64,000 bases of DNA from Mytilus trossulus (GCF_036588685.1 NC_086386.1:17980001-18044000); one strand, 5' to 3'; counted from the stretch's first letter, positions 9,201 through 63,159 are shown. Translations and numbers: made by a program. Notes: generated from the letters alone by a model not told the origin.

Positions 9201-12200
9201 TTATTGTTGAGGTCTATGACTCTTTTCATCTAAAGCCTGGACTACACCTTTCTGTAAGACAACTCCATGGTTGTGAAGAAGCATAGCAGGCCATACAATA
9301 AAGTCAACATAGATACCAGTTTTTGTAAACATTTCAAAACAGTTTGTATCTAGCTCCCAACTAACACCAGTATCAAATACAAAGCCTAATGGTGGATCCT
9401 GGATGGCACTATACCAACAGACCTCCAAACAGGACCTTACATAGGGTTCCAGCTCTGAGGGTATGTCCTTGGTTCCTGTTCCTGATTCTGGGGACATAAA
9501 TAACTGAAATGGAAAGTTAGGAAAACTACTTTAATTTCTATTCCTTTCTTAGCAATTGGCTGGACACATTTATCAATATAATATTTAAGGAAAGAAGCAA
9601 GGTTTATCTTCCTGATTTAGAACTTCAAGTTTTCAACAGTAATCTTCCAATATTGTAAATTTGTTTGTCTACCAATTACTGATGTACATTTGATAAATTA
9701 TATGCCCTTTACAAATCCATCTGATGTTTAGTTAAGTTTTACAATGGAGTCTTTTATATGTATGAACTCACATTTAGAATTATTATGTTAAAGATGACTT
9801 GTTTACAGACTTTTAAAAAAATGTATTGTTACAAGCAGAACACCTTGGTAGCAAATACAGAAGTCCTTCGACTTCCTTACCTTTTTTGCACCCTAGAAGT
9901 TGCTGTAATTGGTATAGACAGAAAAATGTAATCTTTATTTGACTTTGAAAACACCTTATTGCTATTTTGTCCTATCTGGGGAAAACACACATTTATACCA
10001 CATCGGTTTGGGTCAGGCCGCCAAAAAAGAGGTCATCAGTAGTGAGCTGAGGGAGGAAAAACTTAAGAAAGCTATAATCAAGAAAGAGTATGATTCACTT
10101 TTAAATTAAAATTGAAGTAAAAATATATTTTGTTTGAAGTATTTACGTTAGTTTAAACAAGTCTCATTAAAAAGTATCATGCATGGTGAATTGTTTAAAC
10201 AGGGTCCCAAATAGCTTCAACTAGATACAAAAAAGTTGTGTAATTTTATAACTTATCCGGAATGGAATAAATAGAGATTAGGTGTATAGCCAGGTTATGC
10301 ATGGATACAGTGCTTTAATATAACATGTGTCTTGTGCTGTTTGTAGATTCCTTGTGGGATCTTTGATTTAATATGCAACACAAAAGGAAGTTATGTAGTT
10401 TGAGGGGTTTGTGTCATTGTTATTTTGTTTATCAATATGGACAATAAGTGAATCTACTTACACCATATAAATTTGCTATTGTCTGTTTAGCTATATGTTT
10501 TCTTGTTTCTTTTACTACCTTTAAGTTTTTAACTGACAGTTGAGGAATGTTGAACTGAAAAAAAATATATGAAAATGAATAAAAGGAGATAATAGTTAAT
10601 TTCAATCAGAGAGAAACCATAACATAATTTAAACCCTTTTTTTTTATTTCCTTATTAAACATGTGAAAACATCATCCAATAATTCTGCAATGGTTTATTT
10701 TATTCAGCTTCATGTTTCATCTATTTTTGCCGAAAACTAGACTATTAACCTAAACCAGTTTAACATCCATCACACCTCTGACAACTTGGTCATGATTTCT
10801 TAACCAAGAGCCACTCATTTATACACGATATATGTTATGGGAAATACATATTGATCTTTTTAACAACTTCTCTGTACTTAGTAATAGATCACATGATTAC
10901 CATCCACTTATTTTCTTTTTTTTTTTGCTTGATGAAGTGCTATTAGTTAAAGACTTTTTTTATTGTATTTTATAAAAGATATTTACCGTTGACTCCACAC
11001 TCATGTTAGGACCATAAGGTACTAGATAAGTCATCTCTAAAATGTGTAACTGGTGCCTAGATAAAGCACAGCAGAACTCCCAACAATCCTGGTATAAATG
11101 AGAAAAAATATTATCAGTATTTAGCTTCTTAGTAAATGTGGTTTAAAAAGAAATTGTAAAGGATATATTTCTTAAAAATACAACAAATTCATTGGCAGTC
11201 CAAAAAAATGAGCAAAATGAGCATGTCTGACTAAAACAAGATATGCTGTAAGCAGGTTTAATGATTCCTGTACATTTAACAGCTCTATTACACCATTATA
11301 TTTTATAACAAATAAACTTATATTTATACCTTAAATATTGTAAGCAAATAAACACAGGACAGTTTTTCATCATTTAGTTTCTCGTTTGCTATTTCATAGG
11401 CTCTGGGCCATACATTCTGGTAAACTTGATTAAACATGTCTGCTATCTTTGTTGGTCTGATATTCTCCTCCATATTAGGTATATCTGGCATTTCATCAGG
11501 TGTTTTCTCTGTTATATATTTTGAAAGTCTGCAACAACAAAAAAGATGGATACTGATCATGCTAGGGTAAATGTATGTGAGGTTGGTCATATAAAAAGGT
11601 AAATGATCTCCAAATAACTTAGGATTACCTAAGTAAATACAGAAACTGGTGTTGCTTTTTTAAGTGAAACTCTTGATCCTTACTTTAAAATCAATGTATG
11701 AGTATTTTTCTTTCTCAAGTATCTCCTCATGTAATTAATAAAATAGAACTGCATGGTGAACTTGTTCCTGCAGAGGATGTTACAAATGTTTTGTAGTGTT
11801 GTGCCCATCATTTATTTTGTTGTGTTATAAATATTCAGTTTGGACAAAAATGTTCCTGAAACAGCTCACATGCAGAATTAAAACGTGTAAGATATTGACC
11901 ATTTTCCTCATTTTCATGAAAAACAAATGTTTGTACTTGCGTTGTCATATACAGTTCTTTATCTCCAAGGATTTCTGTCTTCTCTTTCTCTATACCCTCA
12001 ATTTGTTTCTGTAGCTTTTCTACTTGCTGATTTAAATCCACAATAACTGAATCTCTAGATTTTCCAGCCTTTTCCATAACAAACTGTGTCATTTGTTTGT
12101 TTAAATCTACGTTTTCTGTTTTATAGTTTTCCAACTCATCGTGTTGTTGACGTATTGAATTCTCAAAGTCAAGAACTTGTCTGAACAATGAAAATGTTGA

Positions 12201-14083
12201 CATTAACAATACAATTTTTCTTAGATATAATAAAAGTTCCTGATTCCAATATACGTTATATATATGTGTATAGAATATAGTTCATGTTTTAACTGTAGGC
12301 TCAAGCTTTGGGTTAACAATCGATTTCAAATCAACCAATGTGTAAATACTGTAACTTAAATAAAAATGAGAAATGAACTGGGGAATGTGTCAATTGTATC
12401 AGTAAAGCAATTACAGCACTTTCTTTGCCCTCGTGAGTTTTTTTTCTGTGCATGTACTTATTTTGTGTCATGGATGGACATCCCATATCCTTTGTTTTGT
12501 CATTATTTAACGTTTTGTGTATCTGTGTAGCATTACTGTCGGATAGAGAGACACAAACCTAACAATACTCCAAATTAATAGTATTACAGATTCAACTTTG
12601 TTGTTTAAATTTCGACTCCTATTTGATAAAGAAATTGCAAACAGTCTTGAACTTCTTAATGTGAAAGGACCTTTAAGAATCCACTTACGATTTCATATTC
12701 ACTATCTGTATCTTGAGCTCTGTCATCTCAGGCGGCTCCTTTTTCTTCCTTGGGTCATTACCTCTGTAAAAATTAAAGCTTTACTTATTTCCAAACTTGT
12801 AAAATACGTTAATTGGCTAAGAAATTTGACATCCTCATTTATTTAAAGTATCTGTTCCATATTCATTCCTTGATGAGTCAATTATGTTTCATGAAATCGG
12901 ACTAAAATCAATTGTTATGAGATTATGATGTCCATTTCATTTATAATGTATTAAGACACATAGATGACCGTCTAGAGATTGCAAGGTTCACAAGTAACAC
13001 CGTCTCTCGAACGATAAATGACTCAGGAAAAAACTGCTATACACAATGAACAAGAAAAAGTAATGTTGCAGAATTTAGATAGTTTCTAAGACTATTACAT
13101 TAGGTAACTGCATTACAATACAAAGACAGAAATTTCAATCTTGTCGTGATACTTTTAACTGAATGTTAAAACAAGTATTGTAACTTAACAAAGGCTTGTT
13201 GCTTACCCGGGTGGCTTCTTTCTAGGATTAACAGCAGCTGTCTTCCCAGAACGGTCAGTCTGTTGTCCCTATAAAAACGATTGAGAATAAAGTGGAATAA
13301 ATAATGTCAATGAAGTACGACCCGTGATTTTCCTGCTATATTTCTTCCATTAATTTTGAAAGAGAGCTTTATCCATTAAAAAATCTTAGCTCGTCTTATT
13401 TTTGTTGTTATTGGGTATGTTATTGAGTAACATGAGGTTTCAATCCCTTTCTTGATCAAAAGAATGCAACGTCAGAAACTATAAGAATCGGTATTTTACA
13501 TTCTTTGTTATCATATTTGACGGGTTGTTTATATTGCAAAATTAAATTTTCATTTCAAAATGTAATTTGACTTCAAACTTGTTATTTTTTATCCAAGAAG
13601 ACAATGCTCAAACTGAATGACAACACTATATATAATGAATAAATTAACGTAGAAGATACACGACATACAATTGTCGTTTAAGCAAGATATATACCGTTTT
13701 ATTACTGGCAGCTGATTTCTGTGATTGCACATTTTGTATACCTTTAGCGTTACTCCTATAACGACAAAACACGTGAAATCATTATACGACAGTTTTGTAC
13801 ATCAAACACACCACCGCACATTATCATATAACCTTACGCAGCTCATATTCACTATCTGAATAAAATAAGATCTGTGCAATTGCTGTGCTTATAATGAATT
13901 TAATCAGATTGCATGTACTCGTCAATAAATTTTACTGTCTGTAAACTTTGCATACATACCAAGAGTAAAATGTATGCTTAAAGGAATAAAAACAAAGATG
14001 TGAACCGTAATGGAAAAATGGACCCTTACATAAAAAGTACTGGAAAATACTTACATACCAGCTTTCATCTGCACTTTACTCAT
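9201..14083 (-). CDS. Mieap/SPATA18-like coiled-coil + MIEAP C-terminal domain protein, paralog A (~387 aa, 9 coding exons)
   Basis: Exons 14055-14083 (MSKVQMKAG), 13695-13755, 13207-13268, 12689-12763, 11941-12180 (coiled coil, GC donor), 11330-11528 (LSK...RPTKIADMFNQVYQNVW), 10987-11088 (DCWEFC), 10462-10554 (KETRK), 9201-9503 (YVRSCLEVCWYSAIQDPPL...VDFIVWPAMLLHNHGVVLQKGVVQ). Total 1164 nt, in frame. Confidence 0.85.
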
Positions 14084-17072: not shown

Positions 17073-20000
17073 TCAGTTTTTATACTGTGCAACTCCTTTG
17101 TATAAAATAGGTCCATTTATAAACAAATGCATTGCTGGCCAAACAACGAAGTCCACTGTATTCCCGCCTTGTGTATATTTCCTGAAGTCGTCTGCCTGTT
17201 CTTCTGCATCAAACCCATAATGCATCGGCGGTTCATTTATTGCACTATACCAACAAACTTCCAAACAACTTTCGACATAGGTGTGCAAATCTTCTTTTAT
17301 ATCTTTCTTCGCAGATTTAAATTTCTGAAACAGAAAATGTTCTTACGTTACAGAAATTGGGTACCTCTTTTGAATTTTGCATGCATGAACTAAAAGTTTG
17401 ACCTTGTAATTTGAACTTCTACTTTTAAACACAATAAGACAACAATCTGTATTTTTTTTTAAAGAAATGCCGATATTTCCGGAACACCTGCAAACAACCC
17501 CAGGTTTTGTGTGTTTCGTGTTTCTCAGTCTATTGTTTTATTTATTACTGGTTTGGTATCTCCCACTTCTTGTTTATCGTCATTATTATATCATGCTTTT
17601 TATCTGTTTTTTATGTTGTGTTATGTGTACTGTTATTTGGGTTTTTTTTGTCATGGCGTGTGAGCTTATTTGCGACATATGAGTTTTAAATCCCTTTGGT
17701 ATCTTATTTTCGCTTCTCCTCACTTGAACATGCTTCTGATTAGTAATACGACCAAAGCTATAACCAAAGACAAACAGGGACCATTTGATTCATGATCCGT
17801 GTAGTTCATATTGCAATGTTTATTTTTTTGGATAATTTTTCAAAAATCTATATTTAAATGACATTTATTATCTACTTGTTATAAACATACTGAATCTGTT
17901 TATATTGTAATATTTTCCTCTAAATTAACAACACGATTCAAAGTTTCATTCGTTTCATTTTGTCTAGTTAAAACAGCAGTTTTATCTGGACAAATTGTAT
18001 GTATCATTTTTAAACTTATATTGTACATAGATCTATTTTTCTTACATATTTTTTATCTATCATATTTTTTATATAAACTTTGTTCTGTTCAGATACTGAT
18101 TTTTACTTTGTCTTGTTGTGCATCTTTTTTAAAACAAAGCAAGATTAAAAAGGGTAGTTGAAATCTAGATGAAATAATGTTCTCATTCAAATCCCATTGT
18201 CGAAAACATCGTCAGTGGTGGTCTTCATCATATTTTGTTTGCATTTTTTATTTCGAGAATTTGTTAATGGTAGATCTTTAATGGTCCCTGTCAATATTTC
18301 CTGATTTTTTTTTACTCTTGGTAATTTTGTTTCTGTTTTGTATTGTTCAAATACATGTACCCGTCTAACGTGGAAGACTGACAAGCTGTATGTTAAATTC
18401 TTACTGTGAGTTTTAGGTACTTGTGTCGTTCGGTTGCTGTTTCATTGGAGTATAAAACTCCAAATATCGGGGTTTTATTTTCAACGATACCTAAAACTTC
18501 GTATGATTGAATTATATCTTATAAGTTTAGCACTGAATCCCAAATTGAACTGTATTTAAAATCTGTGAAATGTCCATTATAACAGCTGATTGAATTATTG
18601 GGTATGAAATATGATGTTTGCCTTTACGGAATCATCGATTCGCACTTTGTTACAATATAACTCTTTAAAAACTTTGAATTTTTGAATACTCCGGCTTTCA
18701 ATCTCAGGAATAGACTACCTTAGCTGTATTTGGCAAAACGTTTAGGATTTTATGGTTCTCAATGGTCTTCAACTTTATTTGGCCTCTTAAACTCTTAAAA
18801 CGCGCGTCTGGCGCAAGTTATTTTTTTATCCTGGTATCTATGATGAGTTTATTTATCTGTGTACCAACCTCGTACAAATTAGGCATCATTTCTTTAGCTG
18901 ATCGTTTTCGTGTTTCAGTCAGTAACGTCGAGCTTCCTGGTGACAATGCATACACACCATCCTAGAATAAAGAAACATTGACATATGATATTCATTTGTT
19001 CGTTCTACATATATATCTATCATTTGTCTTTTTTCGATCCACACGTTTGTGCTTTTAACGTCTGCATGTTTGTCTTTTTTATATGTGAAAATGAATAATT
19101 GAGCTATGTTTTGCTGTCAATAACAAGATTAAGTATTGTTATTGAAGTGAGTGCACTCATCACCCAACTGTCTAAAGGAAAACATTTATTGAAACCTAGA
19201 ATGATTCCTACGTATGTTGTCTTTTGTCAAAATGATGTTACATGTTTCTACAACACGACGCGTATTTAACCAATATAGCCACCTTTGTGAAAATAGAAGA
19301 TAAAAAAGTACAATCTTTTCCACTTTTGGAACGACAAATACTCTAAAAAATTGTGATATCATATCAGGTTATATATCTGTTAACTTTTACAATTGACATA
19401 AATCATCCCTCTTGAGAGTTATTGCTACTAATGTCGACGAATTGTTTTTGATGAAAAATGTAAAATGACAAAAAATATCGAACCATGAGGAATATTCTAA
19501 ATAGAAAGTCATTAAGCAAATGATAAAATCAAAAGCTATAACACAAAAAAGAAATGAATAACAACTGTCATATTACTGACTTGGTACAGGAATTTCTAAT
19601 GTTGAAAAGGATGGATGGAATCTGATTTTATAGCTAGCTAAAACTCTCTCTTGTATGAGCGTCGCCTACAATTCCATTATTTTGTCTACGATGTGTGAAC
19701 AAAAACAAACAGACATTATTGATAAAATTTAAAAAAATAGGGGTACAGCAAATCACTAATTGTTACAAGGATCGGGTTTTAAGAATTATGGGTTCTAAGT
19801 ATTAACCTTGAAATAACCATCTTTTTGTGGACTACATATTATACCCGTGTATATATAACTAAAGACTGAACAAAATCGCTACAAACCTAAGACAGGGCTT
19901 TTTTATCGATCGAAATAAAAATCATCCGGTTAAACCTTATATATAAGGCCAGGAGTTTGTGTTGCCTAGTCTTTAGTTTTCTATGTTATGTCTTCTGTAC

Positions 20001-23000
20001 TATTGTTTGTCTGTTTGTCTTTTTGTTTTTTGGCCATGACGTTGTCAGTTTATTTTCAATTTCTCAGTTTGACTGTCCCTCTGGTATCTTTCACGTCTCT
20101 TCAACCGCATTTAAAAACATTGGCTTACAGTATCATATAAATAGAAAAATGTAAATTCGATAATATTAGGACGCTTCTTTGGATGAGAATATGGTATCAA
20201 CTTTCAAGGTTTTAAGTGCCGAAAATTTATCCTGGCATTTGCGAATAACAATATTTGTTTCTACAAATCAAAATTACCTTGTTTTCTGATGCAAGTAGTA
20301 AGTTTTGTTCTAAGATTTTTGTCTGTTGTTCACAGGTTTCTTTACAGTAATTCCAACATTCCTATAAGAAACGTGTTACACTATATTTTAGATAATTGTA
20401 CCTTCAGTTAAAAAAATAAATTTCTTTTTACACATTGTAACTTAGAACTTCTGAAAATATCTATAATTAAGGACACAATAGTTAACCGATTATCAAATCT
20501 CGTTAGGGACGACATCAAAAGATCGATGTAGGATGAAAAACTTAGATCAAATAGTTTGGGGGTGGGGGGGGGGGGGTGTCAACATTGCTGCAAGTTTTGT
20601 TAATCTAAAATCGATTTTACATATATCCCTATTGGTCAATCAATTTTCCCCAAATTAAGTTAAGAGGGGGGGTGGGGTGTGGGGTCAGTGAAAAAACTAT
20701 ATGAATTAAGTTTTTTTTATCCTTCATTGAACTTTTGATGTCGTCCCTTAATCAATTAGGAACAGACCAAAACTGAGGGAATTAAAAGTGATGAAGATTG
20801 TTGCATTTTTATAGAAGAAAGTTATGATGAAAATTTCTTTTATAAAAAAAGCGTATTCTGTACACACGTAATGTGCTATTATTGCTGTGAAATTATATAT
20901 CCGTCTGACGTTTCTATACAGTTTAAAGAATTTAGAATATGCGGTATGTACTAATGAGACAACTCTCAATGCAAGTCACAATTTGTAAAAGTAAACCATT
21001 AACGGTCAAAGTACGGTCTTAACACAGATACTAGACTCACACCGACAGCAAGCTATGAAGGGTTCACAAAAAGACTATAGTGCAACATCATTCGATTGGG
21101 AAAACCAACGGTCTAGTCTTTTTAAAAATCGAGGATTGAGAAACACTTATAAACCACATAGACAAACGATAACTACTAAACATCAGATGGCAGATTTAGA
21201 ACAGGTGCAAACAAATGCAGAGGGTTAAAACGTTTAAATAGGTACAACACTTCACCCTTATCTTAAACAATAGGCTCACACTCACAAAATAGAAAGAAAC
21301 ACCATTAGATAACAATTGAAATGGCTTAACTCAATCCAATATACATGTATATGATATCAGATGCCTTTGCCTGTGGATTTTCCAATTGTCAAAAATGATG
21401 TCCTAAATACACACACATATAATCGCCATCAATGATAGTGATACATGGCTGTGTACATAATGTATATACAACTCGTCTAAACATCAACCCAACAATGTTA
21501 GATCTGTAAATTTGCTTTCGCAAATTTTTGGTTCTTCCCTCGCCGGGATTCGAACCCACTGCAGCCGTCCCGCTAGACCACACGACCACCTGGGCTCTAA
21601 AAAAAGAGCTTTCGCTGTTTCCACGTCAGTGTTAATCTAGCGGCGTACTAAAGTACATGCTATATAAGGCATGAAGATGTTATTGTTACAGATCAGCTTA
21701 ATTATCTATAGTAAAGGATCCTACAAATTAATGTAAGATACAGTCACAGAAAATAATTATATTAATAAGTACGTCTGAGTTAGTGACAACCCTACAACAG
21801 ATGTATTCATCGGATCGCCATCAATAATAGTGATACATGGCTGTGAACATAATGTATATATAACTCGTCTAAACATCAACCCAACAATGTTAGATCTGTA
21901 AATTTGCTTTCGCAAATTTTTGGTTCTTCCCTCGCCGGGATTCGAACCCATGCTACTGTGATATCGTGACACCAAATCGCCTGCACTGCAGCCGTCCCGC
22001 TAGACCACACGACCACCTGGGCTCTCAAAAAAAGAGCTTACGCTGGCCATGTGTTACCTTTCCACGTCAGTGTTAATCTAGCGGCGTACTACAGTACATG
22101 ATATATAAGGCATGAAGATGTTATTGTTACAGATCAGCTGAATTATCTATAGTAAAGGATCCTACAAATTAATGTAAGATACAGTCACAGAAAATAATTA
22201 TATTCATAAGTACGTCTGAGTCAGTGACAACCCTACAACAGATGTATCCATCGGATCGCCATCAATGATAGTGATACATGGCTGTGTACATAATGTATAT
22301 ACAACTCGTCTAAACATCAACCCAACAATGTTAGATCTGTAAATTTGCTTTCGCAAATTTTTGGTTCTTCCCTCGCCGGGATTCGAACCCATGCTACTGT
22401 GATATCGTGACACCAAATCGCCTGCACTGCAGCCGTCCCGCTAGAACACACGACCACCTGGGCTCTAAAAAAAAGAGCTTTCGCTGTTTCCACGTCAGTG
22501 TTAATCTAGCGGCGTACTAAAGTACATGCTATATAAGGCATGAAGATGTTATTGTTACAGATCAGCTTAATTATCTATAGTAAAGGATCCTACAAATTAA
22601 TGTAAGATACAGTCACAGAAAATAATTATATTAATAAGTACGTCTGAGTTAGTGACAACCCTACAACAGATGTATTCATCGGATCGCCATCAATAATAGT
22701 GATACATGGCTGTGAACATAATGTATATATAACTCGTCTAAACATCAACCCAACAATGTTAGATCTGTAAATTTGCTTTCGCAAATTTTTGGTTCTTCCC
22801 TCGCCGGGATTCGAACCCATGCTTCTGTGATATCGTGACACCAAATCGCCTGCACTGCAGCCGTCCCGCTAGACCACACGACCACCTGGGCTCTCAAAAA
22901 AAGAGCTTACGCTGGCCATGTGTTACCTTTCCACGTCAGTGTTAATCTAGCGGCGTACTAAAGTACATGATATATAAGGCATGAAGATGTTATTGTTTCA

Positions 23001-26000
23001 GATCAGCTAAATTATCTATAGTAAAGGATCCTACCAATTAATGTAATATACAGTCACAGAAAATAATTATATTCATAAGTACGTCTGAGTCAGTGACAAC
23101 CCTACTACAGATGTATCCATCGGATCGCCATCAATGATAGTGATACATGGCTGTGTACATAATGTATATACAACTCGTCTAAACATCAACTCAACAATGT
23201 TAGATCTGTAAATTTGCTTTCGCAAATATATATATATATATATGCATACCGACCAACATAAAGTCATTTGTATAAGATGGATTAAATAAATTTAACGGGT
23301 CGAAGCATGAACACAGCCAAAGACAGCTCTGAAACATTATATAGCTTAGTGCACTTCACAGTTTATGGAATCATTTACTTATATATATATTGACTTTATA
23401 AAAAAGACAGAAGTAAGAAAATAACCTTAAATATATTCAATAGGTAAATACAAATTTGTTTTTCATCCCCCTTATCTTCCGATTTCTCAAACGCGTCTGT
23501 CCATTTGTTATCATACAGGATAGAAATCATTTCCACCAGTTTCTGTGGCCGACGTGGATCACTCAGGTCAGCTATTTGGGGATTCTTATCGAGCATCTTT
23601 TCACCAGAAACTTTACCTAGTCTGGAATATTGATGAATTTTGTTAATAAGTGCATACAAAACTGGGCCTCGTATTGTTGAATCTGCAATGTATTCGTGTT
23701 TCGTTTTGAAATATATAAAAAAAAAAAATTAAAAAAAATTAAAGCATTTCCCAGAGCGAAGAGGACGTAACTTTTCACGGAAACTTTTATCGTTTCGGCT
23801 AAAATATAAACCATATTATATTTGTTCACGGAGTAACCGTTATTATTATGACGGAGATATTGGAATATTACTAAATCGGTCATAAATCTTTTATTTTTAT
23901 AAATGGACATTTTGTCTGAATGCTAGCGGGAAAAAAATATTATTCAATGTTGACTATGTTTTCCGCTGAACTCTTGCTAGTGTATATATTTTGGTTATTT
24001 TTGTTTACATTTTTACCTATTATGTCTGTTTGTCTTGTTTACGCACTATAATGGAATTTGATACGACTGTCACACAAGGTATAATACCAGGTTAATGCAC
24101 AACTATTTACATAATAAAATGCCTATACCAAGTCAGGAGATTATGACAGTTGTTTAAGTTCGTTGAATTTGTTTGAGCTTTTGTTACTGACATTTGAAAA
24201 GCAACGTTCCGATGTTAATTTTGTTCATTATTTTGTTCTTTTTCTTTGTGCTCACTGAAAAAGCTTTTTATACCATGCTTTATTCTATGATTGGAAAAAC
24301 TTTATTAAAGCATTTACGCCATTTAAGCTGAACGTGTGCATTCAAATTTGATTGCAGGGACCTTTTTTGCGACTAAAATAAGACGTCGGTTATTGTTTCT
24401 GTCTTTTCTTTTACGTTTACTGTCATGTGTTGCATTTTCTATATTCACTTATACATTTAAATAAGATTAATCTTTACTTTGATTGTAGTTCATCTTTGTC
24501 AGCCTTAAGGTCAGCGATATGTTTGTCCCTGTCATCCCGTTCTGCTTGTAGTCTTTTTACATCTTCTTTTAAGGTGACTATTATTGCCTCTTTTTGATTA
24601 TGCACCAAGTCCTTCATGGTTTTATTATGCGTGTTTTCGAGATCATGCTTTTGTTTCTCCAGTGTCTTAAGCTCATTCTGTAACTTTTTGAAGTCATAGT
24701 GGATTTGTTCAATATAGGCATCTGTATGGTGCAATCGACTGTAAATAGACAATTAAGTCCTAGATATATAATTCATTTTAGTTACTATTGGATTTGCTTC
24801 AGCAAATAGCTGTAAGTACTCTTAAATATGTATTTTGTTCATTAGGGTTTTTAATAGGATTTTTTTTAAACGATTTAAAATATGATTTGTTTAGTATGAT
24901 CTTGTCAAATTCTTTATTTGCGTGTACCATGCTAAAAGCACATACTTCTATAATGGTTACAGTTTGTGATATTTATCTAACCTCCTATACATGTCTAGGA
25001 ATATGATTGGTTAAAAGCGTCCGCGTGGAGACCGTGTAAATTTCATTTTAGGTTAATAGGGAGGCGGGGGTTATTGCATACACGGTTAGTAATGGTGTTA
25101 CGCCCTGTTATATATTCCATATTAGCTTTAAAGGGAGGCGGGGTTTATTCCATACACGGTAAGTAGTGGTGTTCAGCCCCTTTATCTTCCATATTAGCTT
25201 AAAAGGGAGGCGGCGGTTATTTCATACACGGTTAGTAGTGGTGTAAAGTCCCTTTATACGAACAAAACGGTACTGAAAAAAATCCTAATGGTTTCAACAG
25301 ACAAAGAAATTGATGATTAAGGTTGAAATAAATTCATAAAACACATTTAAACCTTACAAGTTGTTATTGTTGGCATCTGTTTTTGTAGGATCAATGGAAG
25401 TGGTTTCTTAATGCTTACAGTATTGAAGACATGCTCAGTTTGATAGGTATCTAGTCTAAATTTCACACGTTAAGATAGTCGGTAAGATAAATTCGTTACT
25501 TAAGAGGGCACATGGGTACAAAAATAATAGCAAATATTTAAACATTATTTTTTTCATAACAAATTTTATTCATTACATTATAAGTTTTAACATTATGATC
25601 ACATGGTTAAAAAATCAACCCAAAATATCAAGGCTTTTTAGCCCCAGATGATTTTTTAAATTTTGATGTCATTGAAAAAGCTCCAAATTATCTCCCTTTG
25701 GTGAAAAAAATGACATTTTTTGGCATTAAAATTGAAATATCTTTTTAAACGCATCGGTGACCTATATTTTTATTATTTTTTTCAAATAAGCGGCACTTAA
25801 ACTAAACAATTGTAAAATTTAAGCAATTAATTATATTAGGTTCTTTTTTTATTTCGATTTTACCTTTTTTTCTCCTATTAGTGTAACAAAGTACCTAAAC
25901 AAAAATGCATGCTTTTTTTGATGGCAGATTTTGAGCTTAAATGAACGGTGACCCCATATTTTTATTTTATTTTTCTATTAGGTATAGGATTAAGTTTATT

Positions 26001-37700: not shown

Positions 37701-37926
37701 CAAAATGGATAGAAAACCCGAATGTGAAGAGCAAACTGCTGATCAAATGACCGAGAAATTGGATGGTAAACCAAAACTTCAAGAGAAACCAGAGGAGCAC
37801 GTGGCACGTGGGGAAACACATGTTAACCTCGTGCCTCAAGAGAAAACTGAAAATCTTGAGACAGACAAAATGGATGATAAACCTGAATTTAAAGAGAAAG
37901 CGGAAGAGAATGTCGAAAAGAATTAA
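31778..37926 (+). CDS. Mieap/SPATA18-like protein, paralog C (~471 aa, 8 coding exons) with acidic repeat C-terminal extension
   Basis: Exons 31778-31824 (an in-frame ATG also lies at 31769), 34084-34144, 34511-34581, 35090-35341, 36105-36303 (LSKIAGERMTDGNPYITDLSDPQRPQKL...LYDNSWTDAY), 36569-36664 (SCWDFC), 36998-37093 (KETRR), 37333-37926 (YVDKCIELCWYSAISDPPL...FRGYTKSG...VWPSMYLHEYGPLLYKGVVQ + tail). Total 1416 nt, in frame. Confidence 0.88.
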
Positions 37927-38152: not shown

Positions 38153-38154
<2 letters not shown>

Positions 38155-38183: not shown

Positions 38184-38187
<4 letters not shown>

Positions 38188-38355: not shown

Positions 38356-38397
38356 ACGCCAGACACTCGTTTCGTCTACATAAGATTCGTCAGTGAC
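38356..38397 (-). ncRNA. Degenerate type I hammerhead ribozyme motif in a retrozyme/PLE-type repeat
   Basis: Minus strand GTCA-CTGACGA-ATCT-TATGT-AGAC-GAAA-CGAGTG-TC-TGGC. Core intact; stems II and III carry mismatches. Confidence 0.6.
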
Positions 38398-53081: not shown

Positions 53082-56000
53082 TCACATTTGTTCTCTTTCT
53101 CCTTCGGAATCTTTCAGTTGCACAACACCTTTATAAAGCAATGGCCCATCAATATGGAGATACATTGCTGGCCATACTAGATAGTCTACAAATTTTCCTG
53201 ATTTTGTATAACCTCTAAAATCTTCTTTATTCTTTGTTGGATCAAAACTAAAATCCAGTTTCGGGTCATTAATAGCAGCGTACCAACAAATTTCCATACA
53301 AGCATCTACATACAGTCGTAATTCTTCTTTCTGCCTCGCTTTCGTTTTCCAGTAAAACTTAAAAACAAAAGTCGTTAAAATAACAAATTTACCGACAACA
53401 AACTACATGTATATGTATCTATAAACACTTAAATGGTAATAACATACCATAATTTAGGATAACTATATTTTAACAGAAATATAATAAGCCTTGTCGTGAA
53501 CCTACCTTAAAATTGAGTATTGACTGCAGTAAAAATGATGAATATGACTAAGTGGTCGTTGCTTACCATAGTGCTTGAATTGCCCATTTAACACTAGTCT
53601 AAATCATATACATTCCTTTAATCTTTTATTTAGAATATATTGTCAATTTTACTTAAACTTGCATTTTCTCAGTTGTTAACCATATTCAAAGGTCACATGC
53701 GAGTCAATTATACATGTTACCCTTTCGATATCTTTGTTATCTTTCAAATTGTTTCTTATGTATATTTAATATTGGGATATGTCTGTTTTGTTAGTCCAAG
53801 AACCTTTGTAATATTGTTTTGATTCATCACGGTCTTAGTTATTTCCATTCGAATTTTCATTCTTCTACAACAACGTTGTTTCGGTATCTAACATGCTACT
53901 ATATTATTCTTATAACTATTTTGTTCTACATGTACATTTGGTTTTGTCTGTATTCTTTTTAATTGCTTTGACGAAGGTCTGCGTGTAAGTACCGTAACAA
54001 TAATAAGATTGGATATAATTGAATTTATTACCTGGGTTAAATTAACTAACGTATGTTTTGCGACTGCTTTTCTTGCGTCTTTTATCATTTTCAGTTCTGA
54101 CTTTGAGAATGTCTGTATTAATCCCTGTAGATGGTAAAATCAACTTAACACAAAATCACAAACCGATCATGTCTATAGTATATGAGAAGAGTTTCTAATC
54201 AAACATATTTACATATTGAACCCATACACGTATGCAGGTGCTTTTATAAAGTTAATTACGTCGTCGGAGCGCCGGGCCACACTTACACATATTTTGGTTT
54301 GCCCAAACCCTACCCAAAGGTAGTGACAATGGATAGGTAAGTAAGCATTTTTTTTATTTCGACAAAGAGAAATTGAAGTGTCTGATGTTTTTTAGTCTGA
54401 GTGAGTGATGCTGATCTGATAAAAAAAAAACTAATTTCAAAGCTCACCGATAAAAGTTTTTGAGTAGGCAGCTTTTTTCTGGGTAGGTTAACTTGGGGCA
54501 AACATACATATTTTTTTTTCATCGCCCGGATTGTCTTGACTTTTTGTCATTTGAGGTGGTGATTGTAACTGTTAATCATTTTAGTTTAGATAAAGACGAT
54601 TTGGAATTTAATATGTAATGAATATCGAAAAGCTTACTACGATGTATCTGTTTGATGCTTATTCTATTGACTTTAAGTTTTCATCTTCTTTTTTTTACGT
54701 ATATTTGTTAAAAAAAACTTGACTTCGTGAAAAAGGTCTATGTATCAATTTTAACTACAGCATCCCTGAGTCACGCAATAAGGCAGCAACCATTTGATTT
54801 TCGGGGGGGGGGGGGGGGGGGGCTATGTTTTTTTTTCTTGACAATCTATTTTTTTGGCGACAAGTCGAAAACAATTTTTTTTTCAATTTTAGCATAACAT
54901 ATAGTGGCAGCTGAGGGTGAAACAAACACAATTGTTTTTTCTCAGGGTAAAAAACAAATTATTTTTTTCTCCAAAAACTGGAAACAATTTTTTTTCCAAA
55001 AATAAGGCCCTTAAGAATTCTCGCTTGGATTGTTTTTCATTTGTCATTTTTTTGGAATTTGCTTTGAAGGCCGTACGGTGATCTTTAATTGTTAATTTCT
55101 GATTCATTCGGTCTCTTGTGGAGTGTTGTCTCATTGGCAATCATACCACATCTTCTTTTTACATATATCGTTTGTTGTACATATATTTTTGTTTATGTCT
55201 TTTTATGGTTTTGTTCCTATCACTTAATTAATGTAAGGTTTGTTATTTTCCTTTATTTTCTTTTCTTTTCATATGATATTGAGAACGTACCTGTCTATTC
55301 ATTTCTTCCGTGATAACTTCTGGTCGCACGAACTTTTCCTGTAATATTTCCAGTTGGTTATCAGCGCATTCGCGACAGAACTCCCAGCATTTCTGAAATT
55401 TGAGTTAAAGCACCTAAATATTTATTGATCTTTATTTATTGTTTTGATGGAATAGTAAATTGTAATTTATGGTCATTATCATAAAAAAAAAATGTGTTAA
55501 ATGTATACTTTTAAAAACATATTTGAAATATTTATTTGATTGATTCATAGCTTTACTGATATCTTGCTTTTATTATAAATTGTTTTGAATTCAAGAATGT
55601 TGTAAATTTTCAAATCAGAAGTAAGGTTTTAATGATTTTTAAGCAAGTCAAAATGATTATAAAAATGTAGAATCACAATTAAAGTCTATATATTTACCCT
55701 GAATATATCTACCAGTCTTTCAGCGGATAATTTCTCATTATTTTCATCTTTGAAAACATGTTCAAATGCATCAGTCCATAAGTTGTCATACAAGCTATTG
55801 AATTTTTCACAGAGTTTCTGAGGACGGTTTGGATCACTAAGATCAGTAATGGTAGGGTTACCATCAGTCAACTTATCTCCTGCAGCTTTACTTAGACTTT
55901 ATAAATATAATACTCAGCATTTTAATAGCATAAAGATAAAAGTGTAAATGGTTATTCATTAGTAATGTTTGATAACAAGAACAACAAGTAACGTGTAAAC

Positions 56001-59000
56001 CTCTGATGGTCAACGGTATGGCTTCTGTTTTAATTATTTTGGTATTTTAGTGAAAAAAAGTAAAACTGTATATCTTTTTGTATTGCTAAATTTTTGATTT
56101 CTATTATCTAGTAATATACATACAATGGGCCAACGTTGGCCCTATGTATTGCATATAACCGTACAACGTTGGGCCATCATGTTGGGCCAACGTAAGCCCA
56201 CTTTTTATTACTTCCAATGGGTCGATGCCTCTGCTGGTGGACTATTAGTCCCCGAGGGTATCACCAGCCCAGTAGCCAGTACTTCGGTACTGGCATAAAA
56301 ATACGGATTTTTTTGTGTTATTAAAATTTGCTGTAACAAAATGATAAAAATTATTATAAATTAAGGAATGCATCTCCCTCATGCAAAGCTCTGATTCCTT
56401 TCACGGATTTGGCTATACTTTTTGGACCTTTTGGATTATAGCTCTCCATCTTTTATATAAGCTTTAGATTTCAAATATTTTGGCCACGAGCATCACTGAA
56501 GAGACATGTATTGTCGAAATGCGCATCTGGTGCAAGAAAATTGGTACGGTTAATTTTATTGCACTTACATGTTGGGCCAACGAAGGCCCACTTTGCACTT
56601 ATACGTTGGGCCAACGTTAAAATACAACGATGGGCCAATGCAATGATATACGTTGTGCCAATGTTGGGCCAACATACTCATGTTGTCTGGGTACATCATT
56701 GACTTTCTGTGTATATTGAACACTTACTCATTTGTTATAATGACCAATATAATTATTGTACACGTAAAGTGTGTTTTTGTTCGGTATAATGTTGTATAAT
56801 TACTGTCCAACTTGACGTAAATCCAACGTTTATTGATAGAGATATTCATATTACCTTGTTCTCAAGCTCTCCACTTCCTTCTTCAATTTTTCAGTTTCCT
56901 CTTTAAGTCCTGTGGTTTCTTTTCGAAGTTCTGTTATTTCTTTCTCTTTTTCTGTCATTTCTTTTTGTGTTTGTGTCGTTCTGTGTTTTTCGTTTCTTTC
57001 TCTCTCTTCCTTTAGTAACCTTGATAGTTCTTCTGTTTTCTGTTTTAGTTCTTCTATCATTTCTGTATCTTTCTGCTTACTTTTAAACGAAATTGAATCC
57101 AAGTTGTAATTACGTGTATGTATTGTCATAACACAAAGCGTTATCGTATGCAACAGATCTTTTTTATAATGCAGACTTTATACTTAATCTATTGGAAGTT
57201 GGATGTGTACTGATTGATATTTTAGTCTTAGATACACTGTAACGTCCTGTATGTGTTTTCGTTTTAAGTTAACCTTTCTTTATATTGATCTATAATTACA
57301 AATAATGAGTTAAGCTTTATCAAATGATTTTTCAAAGTTTTTTTTTCTTGTATGTTGTGCTGTTACACAACCGTCCCAGTTTGGGTTGAGCGATCACAAA
57401 AATGTTTTACTGCACCACATGTGTATTTGCTAGTCCCAAGTCAGAATCCTGTAGTTTAGTGATTGTCGTTGGTTCAAGCCTTATGTTTGTAACCACAGAG
57501 TAGCAAGCAAGTTTTAAATTTGCAATCCGGAGTCAAAAGTCCTTAATATTAAAATAGCTGTTTTCATTTTATATACCCCTAACCTTTTCCCCTTACCTTT
57601 CTATCAATTCTTGCACTTTTTGATGAAGAACCTCCATTGACGACTGACCACCTTCTAGGGCTTCTTTTAGGATTTGACGAATTGCATCCAAATCTTGTAC
57701 TCCAGTCGGTTTCCAATTACTCCATTGATTTCCATCTATCTTATTTTCATGTTTAGTCCCTCCTCGCAGTTGTGCAGTCTTTGCCTTTTCAAGCATACCA
57801 GGTTTAGTAACATCACTCAATGTAAATAAAAAAAGACGTTGAACTAATGTCATATGAGACAGCAACTTAAAACACAATAACAAAAAATGCATTGTTAGCA
57901 GCAATTTGTTGGTAGTGCATCATAAAATTTACACAATGGTATTCTTTAAATGGATGTCGAAATCTAGAAACGTATTTTAAAACCTGTTATTTTTTTTAAA
58001 ACTATTATTGAAATGTGACAAGTTCATATCAACAATATTCATACATTTTTGAAAATAAATATCAAATATCAAGTATTTTTTTCTTCAGATCTCTATCGGA
58101 TACACCTACATGTATTTGTACAACAGAATGAAAGAATTATCGTTGATTTCTAGTACCTGACAATCTTTCCATAACGTTTTCTGGTAACTTTGATTTGTTT
58201 TGTCCAGAAAGTTTAAAACCTTGAATTTTGAGCGAGGTTTCATGTAATATTCAATGTCAAAATAGTGCTTTGTGTACACACAAATGCACTTCCAACAACT
58301 TGCTGCTGAGAAGTTATCGAATATTAGTGCGAAATGTGTTGACACGCTGCCACTTACGACTATCGACTATAGTCATTGACTAGTTAACTTGAACTTATGT
58401 GACGTCATACACCTTAATTGTTTGAAAATAATTATATTCCCCCTAAAATTTGACAATACGTATTGACATTGATTGTTTTAACCAAAATTTTGAAATTTGA
58501 TAAATAAACGTTGCAATGACTTGGCGGGAAATATTTTATATGAAATAAACCACCAAAATTTAGTTCCACTATACCTGTTTTGTGTTGTAGCAGTAATGTT
58601 TAAAGCCTGTTCTGTAGCAGTAGTTTCTGTTTTGTCCACTTCTTTCGTTGCTTGCTATTTCATAGAAAAACACTTTATATCGTTGTCCAGCGTAAACAGA
58701 ATTTCACATTTTCAAACAAAATTAGTATATGTATTTAGTTTATGTTATAACAAGTCATAGAATAAGTATTACGATCAACTACAAGAAACTCGGGGCCAAA
58801 TTCCCTCGAAATATGGTTCAAAGTAATACAAACTAGCTAACTATGATACAATAACGACACAAGAACAGGGCTCTTGAATTGAAGTATGAAGTTTTGCATA
58901 TTCTTTTCAGGCCCGACCTGAAAAATCAGGTGTATATTTCCACGTTTGATGGACAGTTGCGTCTGTAGCAATAACACCGTATCATCTTATTTTCTTATCG

Positions 59001-60155
59001 TTGAATGATTGTGAAAACATGTTTCCAACAATATACAAGACAGAAATCTTAGGAACTCGACACACAAACAGTAAATAGAAAAGTTACTCAAGTTGCTGCA
59101 ACTTGAAAAAAAAACAATACAACTTAGAACATACATGTACCTCTGCTAATGGACTTTGTTAGTTTAATATACTTTTTTGTCATTCTTGGTTTATATCATC
59201 ATTACATTTTCTTTTTTAAAGGTTTTGTCCTCGGGCATAACTGTGATATTTATATGAAATATATTTTGTAAAAATTTGCATCTGGTGTTTATTACTTTTA
59301 CTTTTGTCGGAAGAGAAAGAAAGAGAGGGGGGATTTCAGGAGGAATTTGAAAATGATTATTCTGGCCAGGTAATACTAGTAACTGAGGGAAAAAATTCCA
59401 CAGAAAACAGGACGAAAATGAATAGTCTGCACTAAACATTTAGGGAATGAATGTGTACAAAATACAAAAGTGAAGATAAAATGAAACATATTGTAAACGA
59501 TATTATAGATACGACTATAGAACAGGACACAAGATTTCTTTATTTATAATTTGTGTAATAAAAGATAATAGCCAAAGAACTTCAGTTTTCGATTTATATT
59601 TAAAATGAAGGTCGTTTGACGTTTAAATTTTATAATAAATGCAACGACTTCAATATTACTGGTGTAAAACCGAGAAAACATTTACTACTGGTTTGAACCT
59701 GCAATTCTGATTCATAATATCGCTCTCTAGCCCGACCTCTTGAATAAACCATTACCAAGTTCAGCTTATCATCAGTGTAACACGACAGGTAAAAATGAGG
59801 AAATTCTGTGTTTCTTTATATTTCGATATGCATAAAATCACTCTGGTTTCAAGTATTGTTTGTGTTGCCTTTTGTAATATATTTTCTGTATTTCCATCCT
59901 TAATTTTTTTAGTGTGTTTTCTACTTTTTTCACTTTCTTATGGTTTCGTCGGTCTTTTTTTTTGTAAATTGCACCTGAACAGCTTTTTCATGACAGGCTT
60001 TGGCAAGAGATTGTTGTAATTGATGAAATTCATTATTAATTTATTAATTTTGGCCTTTTTGATATTGTGACTAGAAACCAAAAAATGCAAAACATTACCG
60101 TTGAAACCAGCACTGTTGATTTATAAGGACCGGTACCTTCAGTACTGGAAGCCAT
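53082..60155 (-). CDS. Mieap/SPATA18-like protein, paralog E (~415 aa, 9 coding exons)
   Basis: Exons 60137-60155 (MASSTE, tentative), 59206-59240 (tentative), 58575-58654, 57597-57815, 56855-57079, 55698-55896 (LSKAAGDKLTDGNPTITDLSDPNRPQKL), 55291-55392 (KCWEFC), 54032-54124 (KDARK), 53082-53357 (YVDACMEICWYAAINDPKL...VWPAMYLHIDGPLLYKGVVQ). Total 1248 nt, in frame. Confidence 0.83.
56203..56560 (+). mobile_element. Retrozyme-like non-autonomous retroelement monomer (~351 nt)
   Basis: Bounded by direct repeat TTTTATT (56203-56209 and 56554-56560). Structured 5' domain with a C(TTCG)G hairpin and a hammerhead near the 3' end. Confidence 0.75.
56490..56533 (+). ncRNA. Type I hammerhead ribozyme (minimal, palindromic stem III)
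   Basis: GCATCA-CTGAAGA-GACA-TGTAT-TGTC-GAAA-TGCGCA-TC-TGGTGC. Stem I GCAUCA/UGGUGC, conserved CUGANGA and GAAA, stem II GACA/UGUC. Predicted cleavage after C56527. Confidence 0.85.
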
Positions 60156-62170: not shown

Positions 62171-63159
62171 TCACTTCATTTGCATCACTCCTTTCACAAC
62201 TAAAGGACCTTGGTCATAAAACAAAAGTGCAGACCACACTGCAAAGTCTAACTGTATTCCAGATTTTGTATAATGTCTAAAATTTTCAGCTAGATCTTCT
62301 GCCTTTTGGTGTTCCATGGGCCATTTCAGTACCATTGGGGGATCGAGAACATTCATAAACCAGCATATTTCTATACACTTGTCCATATATTTATTCACAT
62401 TAAAATTGTCTTGATATTTTTGAAGGCTCGGACGTAGTTCAGTCGTTTTGAAATCCTAAAATAACCATAAACATTTTAATCATTTTTGATAATTTTATTT
62501 CTATCAATATGTTATCAACCATGCTTTAAAAAACAGCTGCATATTTGTTAACCTGCGTTACAAGAAATTTTGAATTGAATTTTGAGACAACCTGCAGCAT
62601 ACATTGTGTGTCAATCTTTCGCTTATAGTTATTCTGTCTTGCTTATATAGTTCCCTGTTCCAATCCATTTGTTGTTTTGAGTCAACGGATACTATTTCTA
62701 ACTTTCCTATCTTTCTGTAAAAATAACACCATCATCTTTGCACCGTAATATCATCAACAAATTTTTATCATCTACCAATTACTTGATTGCATGTGTAGTC
62801 AATAATACATGACATATACATTCCTAAAATATGTAATACAGTTTTGATTGATTGATTGATTGCTTAAAGTCCAGTGGCAAATAGTTCATGCAAGTTCAGG
62901 GCGAAGACAGTTTTGAATGATTATCTGCTCTTGAAAATAATTTAGCTTGAGGTAGGAATCTTAATGGTTATTTCTTGAAATGAATTTAATATCGATATAT
63001 AAAACATAAATGTGTCACGAGCGCCGGTAAGCTTTGCGGCACCTATGTTATATACATTACCTGAATCAGAGCCTGGATGCTTAATTTCGCTGTCTCTTTG
63101 ACACAAGTTTTAGCATACCGCTGAAACTTGCTATTGTGTATCACACTCGGATTTGTAAC
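62171..63159 (-). CDS. Mieap/SPATA18-like protein, paralog F; last two exons only, rest presumably beyond window
   Basis: Exon 63061-63159 (VTNPSVIHNSKFQRYAKTCVKETAKLSIQALIQ, phase 0-0) and exon 62171-62455 (…YMDKCIEICWFMNVLDPPMVL…FRHYTKSG…FAVWSALLFYDQGPLVVKGVMQMK*). Confidence 0.8.

What the first reader, a model, noticed from the sequence alone, without database searches (positions are those of the whole stretch)
9201..63159. Six-member tandem array of diverged Mieap/SPATA18-domain genes with a conserved core and variable N-termini
Seen: six paralogs in ~54 kb next to CHM. The five complete ones share a fixed 3' module: a phase-2 coiled-coil exon (225-261 nt), a 196-199-nt LSK..NP.I.DLSDP.RP..LYDN.WTDA exon, an 84-102-nt CW.FC exon, a 93-99-nt KETRK exon, and a terminal YV..C.E.CW....DPP...V.WPA..L...GP.L.KGV.Q exon. 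The truncated sixth shows the last two exons. Their 5' micro-exons and tails look unrelated. All five complete models splice in frame despite strong divergence, which argues for purifying selection rather than pseudogene debris. Established: vertebrate SPATA18/Mieap is a single-copy, p53-induced mitochondrial quality-control protein enriched in spermatids. Inference: this is a lineage-specific diversified system with a constant effector core and variable targeting modules. It could act in mitochondrial sorting or elimination (mussels have doubly uniparental mtDNA inheritance) or in stress and immune responses.
Basis: partly seen in the sequence, partly recalled or inferred. Interest (0 to 1): 0.85.

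Follow-up and report, generated by a model that had tools for sequence, protein, structure and literature searches.

The report
Mussel Mieap-like gene cluster
The window holds six intact, spliced paralogs of the mitochondrial quality-control gene SPATA18/Mieap; they are one corner of a bivalve-wide gene-family expansion that has already been published, so they are real but ordinary, and they show no tie to paternal mitochondrial inheritance.

Summary
Six MIEAP-domain (Pfam PF16026) genes lie at the stated places in this Mytilus trossulus chromosome window. Each has a coiled-coil exon followed by a four-exon MIEAP module with conserved phases and sizes.

- **Models and transcripts:** Public gene models match A, C, D, E and F. 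Transcript contigs from four studies splice gene D at GT..AG sites, as predicted. Gene B rests on splice sites and phases only.
- **Window effects:** "Six" and "truncated" come from the window edge. Gene F continues past the window end. The local cluster has 17 genes in 200 kb. At least 68 of about 83 family loci lie on this one chromosome.
- **Age and selection:** A–E form one old clade; F belongs to the neighbouring clade. Synonymous sites between paralogs are saturated while replacement sites are not. Orthologs in other Mytilus species are 95–98% identical in the domain.
- **Prior knowledge:** The expansion is published (Regan et al. 2021: about 53 genes per bivalve, with duplications in the bivalve ancestor). 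This undercuts the doubly-uniparental-inheritance idea.
- **Likely mechanism (inferred):** a dimeric, amphiphilic Mieap-like scaffold.
- **Side lead:** The closest solved fold to the MIEAP domain is GrpE, with weak scores and no sequence support. MIEAP genes lie beside HSPA12-like genes more often than chance. Two other first-reader notes in this scan raised the same idea on nearby DNA.

The parts
9201..14083 (-). Gene A (~360 aa). Exons: TE 9201-9503, KE 10462-10554, CW 10987/10999-11088, DL 11330-11528, coiled coil ~11901-12179. 5' micro-exons: 12688-12762, 13206-13268, 13695-13754, 14054-14083. The DLSDP motif is degenerate.
   Evidence: M. coruscus ortholog P0062 maps at 89-100% identity, but that model skips the in-frame CW exon. 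Splice sites and phases. Pfam MIEAP on the terminal exon: 32.5 bits.
17073..24752 (-). Gene B. Exons: TE 17073-17324, KE 18869-18961, CW 20278-20361, DL 23426-23621, coiled coil ~24474-24752. The 5' end was not defined. A 441-bp satellite (21557-23227) lies in the CW-DL intron.
   Evidence: Exon HMM and tblastn hits. Canonical AG/GT sites in the family's phases give 196/84/93 nt. No public protein model was found.
34511..37926 (+). Gene C (~460-470 aa). Exons: 5' exon 34511-34582, coiled coil ~35091-35342, DL 36105-36303, CW 36569-36664, KE 36998-37093, TE 37333-37926. The terminal exon carries a 54-nt-repeat acidic tail (37586-37907).
   Evidence: M. galloprovincialis models P0007, P0154 and P0170 map at 81-100% identity. 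TRF. Phases.
44983..50674 (+). Gene D (336 aa, LOC134697526). Exons: 44983-45043, 45433-45486, 46204-46466 (coiled coil), 47155-47353 (DL), 47445-47528 (CW), 49661-49753 (KE), 50417-50674 (TE).
   Evidence: RefSeq protein P0002 is 99-100% identical on most exons; the residual mismatches sit at HSP ends that run into introns. Single 1.1-1.4-kb contigs in 4 runs from 4 studies join the exons at GT..AG introns. Full MIEAP domain: 51.3 bits.
53082..60155 (-). Gene E (416 aa, LOC134696562). Exons: TE 53082-53357, KE 54032-54124, CW 55291-55392, DL 55698-55896, coiled coil 56857-57084, then 57599-57817, 58577-58654, 60099-60155.
   Evidence: M. trossulus RefSeq protein P0155 is 100% identical on five exons and 97% on CW and KE; the terminal-exon HSP reads 89% because it runs into the intron. 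Orthologs P0010 (M. edulis), P0172 (M. galloprovincialis) and P0157 (M. coruscus).
62171..64000 (-). Gene F, 3' part. Exons: TE 62171-~62470, KE 63061-63162, CW 63745-63852. The gene runs on past the window end; its DL exon is at +391 to +624. It is the first member of the neighbouring subfamily.
   Evidence: M. coruscus orthologs P0156 and P0158 (387-388 aa) map at 88-100% identity. DL exon in L031. Tree placement.
2783..2989 (+). That gene occupies about 1-8200(+).
   Evidence: Pfam GDI PF00996, 30.9 bits. CHM as opposed to GDI was not told apart.

Best explanation
The window holds six intact members of the bivalve-wide expansion of SPATA18/Mieap-like genes in Mytilus trossulus chromosome C14.

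Protein design: each gene encodes a 330-470-aa protein with three parts. First comes a short, disordered, paralog-specific N-tail. Next is a ~100-residue charged helix predicted to form a parallel dimeric coiled coil. Last is a C-terminal MIEAP domain (a four-helix bundle plus a small beta sheet) encoded by four exons of fixed phase.

Origin: the genes arose by old tandem duplications. A-E are one clade. F opens a second clade that continues downstream.

Shown: the genes are kept by purifying selection, have one-to-one orthologs across Mytilus species, and gene D is transcribed and spliced.

Mechanism (inferred by homology to vertebrate Mieap, not shown): they act as dimeric, amphiphilic scaffolds. 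The conserved hydrophobic MIEAP domain is the binding module, for mitochondrial phospholipid in the vertebrate model. The fast-evolving hydrophilic N-half makes multivalent weak contacts. Paralogs would differ in tissue or stress use, in somatic mitochondrial or proteostasis quality control.
For: - Family identity: MIEAP hits on single exons and on full models.
- Species and annotation: Mytilus trossulus; D and E are RefSeq LOC genes.
- Exon phases and sizes are conserved in A-E.
- Gene D is spliced in contigs from 4 runs of 4 studies.
- Scale: 17-gene local cluster and 88 exon matches genome-wide, 72 of them on C14.
- Tree: A-E form a clade at 95/93 support; F joins 10 downstream genes at 98/95.
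- Selection: pS is saturated while pN is 0.26-0.49. Orthologs are 95-98% identical in the domain against 84-88% in the N-half.
- Structure: AF2 model at pLDDT 83, with one helix over residues 30-136, then four helices and a beta sheet.
- Dimer: homodimer prediction scores 0.35 against 0.00 for the best control. The partner's pLDDT is 72 and the runs agree in at least 64% of contacts. The coiled coil is in register. On eukaryotes the mark was reached by 17 of 29 proteins solved as pairs of one chain and by 0 of 30 solved as single chains.
- Amphiphilic design: charged N-half (31-52% KRDE) against a more hydrophobic C-half, as described for vertebrate Mieap (PMC10845071).
- Published context: bivalve expansion (PMC8382680) and gill enrichment (PMC5549309).
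Against: - No functional data exist for any bivalve paralog.
- Lipid binding, condensate formation and mitochondrial localisation are carried over from vertebrate SPATA18, whose domain shares only a Pfam-level match.
- These genes are not its orthologs. A better-scoring canonical copy lies at C4:72.43 Mb.
- Gene B has no public model or transcript evidence.
- The runs laid on gene D are coded and only guessed to be RNA, and they give no tissue.
- The dimer pass comes from a model's own confidence. Coiled coils can pass from memory.
Confidence: 0.8

Rival explanations
1. GrpE-like co-chaperones. The coiled coil plus the MIEAP domain would be a divergent GrpE-type module: a dimeric long helix, a helix bundle and a C-terminal beta domain. 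It would partner with Hsp70-family ATPases, in particular the HSPA12-like genes that are also expanded in bivalves.
For: - Domain-only model (pLDDT 89.9): Foldseek ranks 1-10 are all GrpE or GrpEL1, at E 0.24-1.1.
- VIA-align against 48,161 chains, without Foldseek: ranks 1-3 are E. coli GrpE, Geobacillus GrpE and human GrpEL1. Z is 6.7, 6.7 and 5.8, rmsd 3.6-5.7 A, about 100 residues aligned.
- Gene D full model: GrpE chains align over 144 of 154-161 residues, Z 5.3-5.9. This spans the helix tail, the bundle and the beta domain.
- The predicted parallel dimer includes contacts between bundle helices.
- A 352-aa HSPA12-like open frame sits inside this 17-gene cluster at C14:18,170,974-18,172,029.
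- Four MIEAP loci on C14 have such a gene within 10 kb, against 0.43 expected. Circular-shift P is 0.0008 at 10 kb and 0.003-0.017 at 20-100 kb.
- Share of matches on C14: 82% of MIEAP, 35% of HSPA12-like and 64% of canonical HSP70 rows, against 4% of C1q and 0.7% of BIR.
- HSP70 and Mieap are both listed as ancestral bivalve expansions.
Against: - All Z values are under 8, which is within the tool's stated background. Foldseek probabilities are at most 0.33.
- No sequence support: 0 of 50 family members hit Pfam GrpE, and hhalign of the MIEAP profile against a 31-sequence GrpE profile gives probability 0.4%.
- The MIEAP bundle has four helices within one chain, where GrpE has two per chain.
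- No HSPA12-like gene lies inside this window.
- No paper in the library links Mieap to GrpE or Hsp70.
- The adjacency test used lower-bound hit lists and several thresholds.
Confidence: 0.15
2. Diversified immune or stress effector family. A constant MIEAP 'effector' would be aimed by variable N-terminal targeting modules, as the first reader proposed in general form.
For: - N-terminal micro-exons are unrelated between paralogs.
- The N-half evolves 3-4 times faster than the domain.
- Large tandem expansions in bivalves often concern stress and immune genes (PMC8382680).
Against: - The N-tails are 30-120 residues of low-complexity sequence. They have no Pfam domain and pLDDT under 50.
- One-to-one orthologs are conserved across five Mytilus species, which does not suggest rapid arms-race turnover.
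- No infection-response data were found.
Confidence: 0.15
3. The array serves doubly uniparental inheritance: sorting or elimination of sperm mitochondria in mussels.
For:
- Mytilus has DUI.
Against: - The expansion dates to the bivalve ancestor. It is present in all 15 bivalves analysed, at a mean of 53 genes. To my knowledge these include oysters and scallops, which lack DUI.
- Paralogs A-F diverged long before Mytilus, since dS is saturated.
- MIEAP genes are gill-enriched in a mytilid.
Confidence: 0.04

Closest known systems
Vertebrate SPATA18/Mieap (p53-inducible mitochondrial quality-control protein; Pfam PF16026)
   Same: - C-terminal MIEAP domain over its full length.
- Preceding coiled coil, with a hydrophilic N-half and a hydrophobic structured C-half (PMC10845071).
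   Different: - These are paralogs, not orthologs, at 50-52 bits against 103 bits for a single exon of the canonical copy at C4:72.43 Mb.
- They are shorter (330-470 aa).
- There are dozens of copies instead of one.
- No data exist on p53 control, cardiolipin or condensates.
Bivalve Mieap orthogroup expansion (OG24 of Regan et al. 2021, PMC8382680)
   Same: A large multi-copy MIEAP family in a bivalve genome. The duplications are ancient and the copies retained.
   Different: The paper gives counts and a gene tree only. It does not describe this locus, the fixed four-exon module, the concentration on one chromosome, the two subfamilies or the predicted structure. Membership of these genes in OG24 itself was not checked.
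GrpE / GrpEL1 nucleotide-exchange factors of Hsp70 (Pfam PF01025)
   Same: - Same order of parts: a long dimerising helix, a helix bundle and a small C-terminal beta domain.
- GrpE is the top-ranked solved fold by two aligners.
   Different: - No sequence similarity.
- The scores are weak.
- The bundle is built differently.
- No partner has been shown.

Membership tests
MIEAP / SPATA18 family (Pfam PF16026) | Match to the MIEAP profile above the 27-bit gathering score | tested here: met
   Terminal exons alone score 30-35 bits for A, B, D and F. C (13.6) and E (21.3) fall below as single exons. Full models score 51.3 (D), 51.8 (C) and 50.1 (E) bits over 1-194 of 195 positions. Model A, which lacks the CW exon, scores 34 bits.
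MIEAP / SPATA18 family (Pfam PF16026) | Coiled-coil, hydrophilic N-half followed by a hydrophobic structured C-half | tested here: met
   AF2 gives one helix over residues 30-136, then a four-helix bundle and a beta sheet. Composition differs between the two halves. The design is described for vertebrate Mieap in PMC10845071.
MIEAP / SPATA18 family (Pfam PF16026) | One-to-one orthology with vertebrate SPATA18 | tested here: not met
   The genome has a far better canonical match at C4:72.43 Mb (102.7 bits on one exon). In the tree that copy is the long-branched outgroup. The window genes are lineage paralogs.
MIEAP / SPATA18 family (Pfam PF16026) | Mitochondrial action: cardiolipin or phospholipid binding, condensates, p53 induction | not testable with these tools
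   This needs localisation, lipid-binding and expression experiments.
GrpE (Pfam PF01025) | Sequence match to the GrpE profile or signature | tested here: not met
   0 of 50 MIEAP family members hit PF01025. hhalign against E. coli GrpE gives probability 0.3%. hhalign against a 31-sequence GrpE profile gives 0.4%.
GrpE (Pfam PF01025) | Fold: a long paired helix, a helix bundle and a C-terminal beta domain, as a dimer | tested here: inconclusive
   GrpE ranks first in Foldseek (E 0.24-1.1) and in VIA-align (Z 6.7, rmsd 3.6 A, 100 aligned), but the scores lie within background. A parallel dimer is predicted at 0.35 against 0.00 for the controls.
GrpE (Pfam PF01025) | Binds an Hsp70 nucleotide-binding domain and speeds nucleotide exchange | not tested
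The one complex job went to the homodimer.

The most novel reading that the evidence does not exclude
The MIEAP domain with its coiled coil is a divergent GrpE-like module. The bivalve Mieap expansion would then be a set of co-chaperones, or exchange factors, that co-evolved with the expanded HSPA12/HSP70 genes. These lie beside MIEAP genes and on the same chromosome. If so, 'mitochondria-eating protein' function would be recast, in vertebrates too, as Hsp70-linked proteostasis.
Probability: 0.15. Interest if true: 0.75.

Novelty: already known. Interest (0 to 1): 0.3.

Why it matters
As found, it matters little. The genes are annotated as uncharacterised LOC genes or 'MIEAP C-terminal domain-containing' proteins, and the bivalve-wide Mieap expansion is in print.

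This report adds:
- a clean anatomy of the family: a fixed four-exon domain module, a dimeric coiled coil and a disordered tail;
- the scale and layout of the family: a 17-gene cluster in two subfamilies, with more than 80% of loci on one chromosome;
- evidence for long-term purifying selection;
- a reasoned rejection of the DUI idea.

The GrpE-like fold and the HSPA12 neighbourhood are the only parts that could interest a specialist. If they hold, they give a testable biochemical function for a domain whose mechanism is still debated.

Tried and rejected
- **Interspecies dN/dS:** I used paralog pN/pS per exon and ortholog protein identity instead.
- **Remaining loci:** The tree therefore holds 63 of about 83 loci, and no MIEAP-HSP70 co-fold was run.
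- **Joined exon models:** Exons were searched one by one by reference, and full-length work used public protein ids.
- **PDB by sequence:** only coiled-coil or spurious hits.
- **Foldseek and VIA-align on the full-length model:** the long helix swamped the results.
- **Sequence link to GrpE:** none found.
- **The search for related loci for GrpE:** returned only near-identical enterobacterial copies. These were replaced by a phylum-wide draw.
- **The search for homologous proteins on the D domain:** found only Mytilus and one clam relative, so it says nothing about taxonomic range.
- **Protein atlas:** added nothing beyond the family name.
- **Literature:** no paper on bivalve MIEAP function, on infection response, or on a Mieap-GrpE or Mieap-Hsp70 link.
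- **Pseudogene debris:** rejected. Frames are open, splice phases are conserved, pN is far below pS, and transcripts exist.
- **Runs laid on gene D:** they are coded, so no tissue or sex could be read.


Full report
**What is in the window.** The window is G000:C14:17,980,001-18,044,000, AT-rich at about 31% GC. The genome is Mytilus trossulus: the protein of gene D is RefSeq XP_063415875.1 (LOC134697526), on a contig of exactly C14's length. All six hit Pfam MIEAP (PF16026) at profile positions ~120-194, and four pass the 27-bit cut-off on that exon alone. All-against-all blastp of open frames, tblastn and exon HMMs recover the other exon classes. These are five 'DLSDP' exons, five 'CW' exons (B weakly), five 'KETRK' exons (B weakly) and a coiled-coil exon upstream of each.

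**Gene models.** Exons were searched one by one by reference, and full-length work used public protein ids. A library-wide phmmer search with D's terminal exon found 1043 proteins at E<=0.001. Among the listed hits were models that map back onto the window:
- P0002 is gene D (336 aa).
- P0007 and P0170 match gene C.
- P0010 and P0155 match gene E. P0155 is M. trossulus's own protein, 100% identical on five exons.
- P0062 matches gene A.
- P0156 and P0158 match gene F.

The full models hit MIEAP over 1-194 of 195 positions at 50-52 bits. Canonical AG/GT sites in identical phases give these exon sizes in nt:

| Exon | A | B | C | D | E |
|---|---|---|---|---|---|
| DL | 199 | 196 | 199 | 199 | 199 |
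| CW | 90 or 102 | 84 | 96 | 84 | 102 |
| KE | 93 | 93 | 96 | 93 | 93 |

Gene B has no public model; its integrity rests on open frames, splice sites and phases.

**Transcripts.** 24 runs from 13 studies hold about a tenth of the sampled words of the 5.8-kb gene D stretch, which is about the exonic share. I laid four runs from four studies on it. In each, a single contig of 1.1-1.4 kb joins the exons across GT..AG introns. The joins are 46466>47155, 47351>47443 (+2), 47528>49661 and 49751>50415 (+2). This is the P0002 structure. The runs are coded and only guessed to be RNA. However, intron-less joined contigs in small assemblies from four studies are best read as mRNA. No tissue could be read.

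**Window-edge effects and scale.** Gene F is not truncated. Its CW exon is at 63745-63852, and its DLSDP exon lies 0.4-0.6 kb beyond the window end. I fetched 244 kb around the window. There are 17 terminal exons, each paired with a DLSDP exon, between 17.989 and 18.190 Mb. None lie in the 29 kb upstream. A six-frame scan of the genome with PF16026 gives 88 exon matches, which is a lower bound and amounts to about 83 loci. Of these matches 72 are on C14. Some copies on scaffold C26 are identical to C14 copies and may be alternative-haplotype duplicates. A canonical-looking SPATA18 copy, at 102.7 bits on one exon, lies at C4:72.43 Mb. Intronless full-domain open frames lie on C2 and C5.

**History and selection.**
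- An IQ-TREE tree of 63 terminal exons (91 columns, so many forks are open) puts A-E in one supported clade (95/93). F falls in another (98/95) with ten downstream cluster members and two copies at 71.1 Mb. The window therefore straddles two subfamilies.
- End branches are 0.4-1.1 changes per site.
- Per-exon Nei-Gojobori counts, summed but never joined, give pS of 0.67-0.88, which is saturated. pN is 0.26-0.49. The duplications are old, and replacement changes have been held back.
- Orthologs in M. edulis, M. galloprovincialis and M. coruscus are 95-98% identical in the domain half and 84-88% in the N-half.
- M. californianus orthologs also exist.
- A fused M. coruscus model (P0159) shows that the F-E adjacency is conserved.

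**Protein anatomy.**
- AlphaFold2 on P0002 with a 47-sequence alignment reaches pLDDT 83. It shows a disordered tail (1-32), one helix over 30-136, four helices (151-284) and a small beta sheet (290-335).
- The N-halves are 31-52% charged. The C-halves are more hydrophobic, at 27-37% against 21-24%. This is the amphiphilic design described for vertebrate Mieap (PMC10845071).
- The 5' micro-exons have no detectable relatives in other paralogs. Only the coiled-coil exons of C and D align.
- A homodimer prediction passes its controls, at 0.35 against 0.00. The partner's pLDDT is 72 and the runs agree in at least 64% of contacts. On eukaryotes the mark was reached by 17 of 29 proteins solved as pairs of one chain and by 0 of 30 solved as single chains. 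The predicted coiled coil is parallel and in register over 30-127, with added contacts between bundle helices. This supports dimerisation but does not show it.

**Comparison with what is known.** Regan et al. 2021 (PMC8382680) list the Mieap orthogroup OG24 at 807 genes. That is 53.1 per species in 15 bivalves against 0.6 in 17 other molluscs. They find three duplications in the bivalve ancestor, kept by all the bivalves studied. Gerdol et al. 2017 (PMC5549309) find the MIEAP domain over-represented among gill-specific genes of another mytilid. The expansion is therefore published, ancient and not tied to DUI taxa, and the one tissue survey points to gill rather than gonad.

**A lead met on the way.**
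- A domain-only model was made from an intronless paralog (L002:1489-2148(-), pLDDT 89.9). It finds no significant PDB match.
- Even so, Foldseek's ranks 1-10 are all GrpE or GrpEL1, at E 0.24-1.1.
- VIA-align, run without Foldseek against 48,161 chains, also ranks three GrpE clusters first: Z 6.7, 6.7 and 5.8, rmsd 3.6-5.7 A, about 100 aligned.
- With gene D's full model, GrpE chains align over 144 of 154-161 residues, at Z 5.3-5.9. This covers the helix tail, the bundle and the beta domain.
- All of these scores are within the tool's stated background. Sequence gives nothing: 0 of 50 members hit Pfam GrpE, and hhalign probability is 0.3-0.4%.
- After these searches I looked up the scan's notes. 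Two first-reader notes on nearby DNA make the same suggestion (s1-830239, s1-829979).
- I then tested the second note. A 352-aa open frame at C14:18,170,974-18,172,029, inside this 17-gene cluster, is a divergent HSP70-family (HSPA12-like) exon.
- The genome has at least 115 such exons, 41 of them on C14.
- Four separate MIEAP loci on C14 have one within 10 kb, where circular shifts expect 0.43. P is 0.0008 at 10 kb and 0.003-0.017 at 20-100 kb.
- As a control, only 4% of the best 150 C1q hits and 0.7% of the best 150 BIR hits lie on C14.
- None of the HSPA12-like genes is inside the present window.
- I rate this a real but unproven lead, at about 0.15.

**Limits.**
- All functional statements are inference.

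**Verdict.** They are not lineage-specific, and nothing links them to DUI. The feature is a slice of a known bivalve expansion.

Noticed in passing
window 21557-23227: A 441-bp tandem repeat of 3.8 copies (93% matches) lies in the CW-DL intron of gene B. It produces repeated spurious ORFs on both strands. ARAGORN finds no tRNA gene in 21000-23600.
   Followed up: partly
window 55900-56850 (intron of gene E): Another note places a hammerhead ribozyme at 56203-56560. Rfam finds nothing there, even at E<=1. The whole window has no Rfam hit at gathering score.
   Followed up: partly
window 37586-37907 and 38943-39340: Gene C's terminal exon carries a 54-nt coding repeat of about 5.5 copies, which gives an acidic, K/E/D-rich C-terminal tail absent from the other paralogs. 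A 33-nt repeat of 12 copies lies 1 kb downstream.
   Followed up: no
window 10987-11088: Gene A's CW exon is open, has splice sites in phase 0/0 and measures 90 or 102 nt. The M. coruscus ortholog model P0062 skips it. This could be alternative splicing or an annotation miss.
   Followed up: partly
window 46452-47033, 48198-48973, 49750-50331 (introns of gene D): Contig depth here is hundreds to tens of thousands of times that of the exons, with many internal joints, in all four runs. These look like abundant, transcribed or multi-copy repeats inside the introns.
   Followed up: no
G000 C14 as a whole: Three families crowd onto one 82-Mb chromosome, which is 6% of the genome: MIEAP (72 of 88 matches), HSPA12-like (41 of 116) and canonical HSP70 (14 of 22 rows, including intronless copies at 43.76-43.79, 54.19-54.21 and 57.93 Mb). 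C1q (6 of 150) and BIR (1 of 150) do not.
   Followed up: partly
L002 (C2:83.75 Mb), L004, L050 (C5:36.73 Mb): Single-exon open frames of 295-803 aa carry the whole MIEAP domain (71 bits in L002). They may be retrocopies of the multi-exon family that stayed open.
   Followed up: partly
L054/L055, L029/L025, L061/L060 (scaffold C26 vs C14): Terminal exons on the 4.3-Mb scaffold C26 are identical or nearly identical to copies at C14:39.6 and 42.3 Mb. C26 may be an unplaced alternative haplotype, which would inflate family counts slightly.
   Followed up: no
window 1-8200 (+): The upstream gene has a GDI/REP-family exon at 2783-2989. It also has a 75-nt coding repeat (7903-8110) in a serine/aspartate-rich terminal open frame.
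   Followed up: partly
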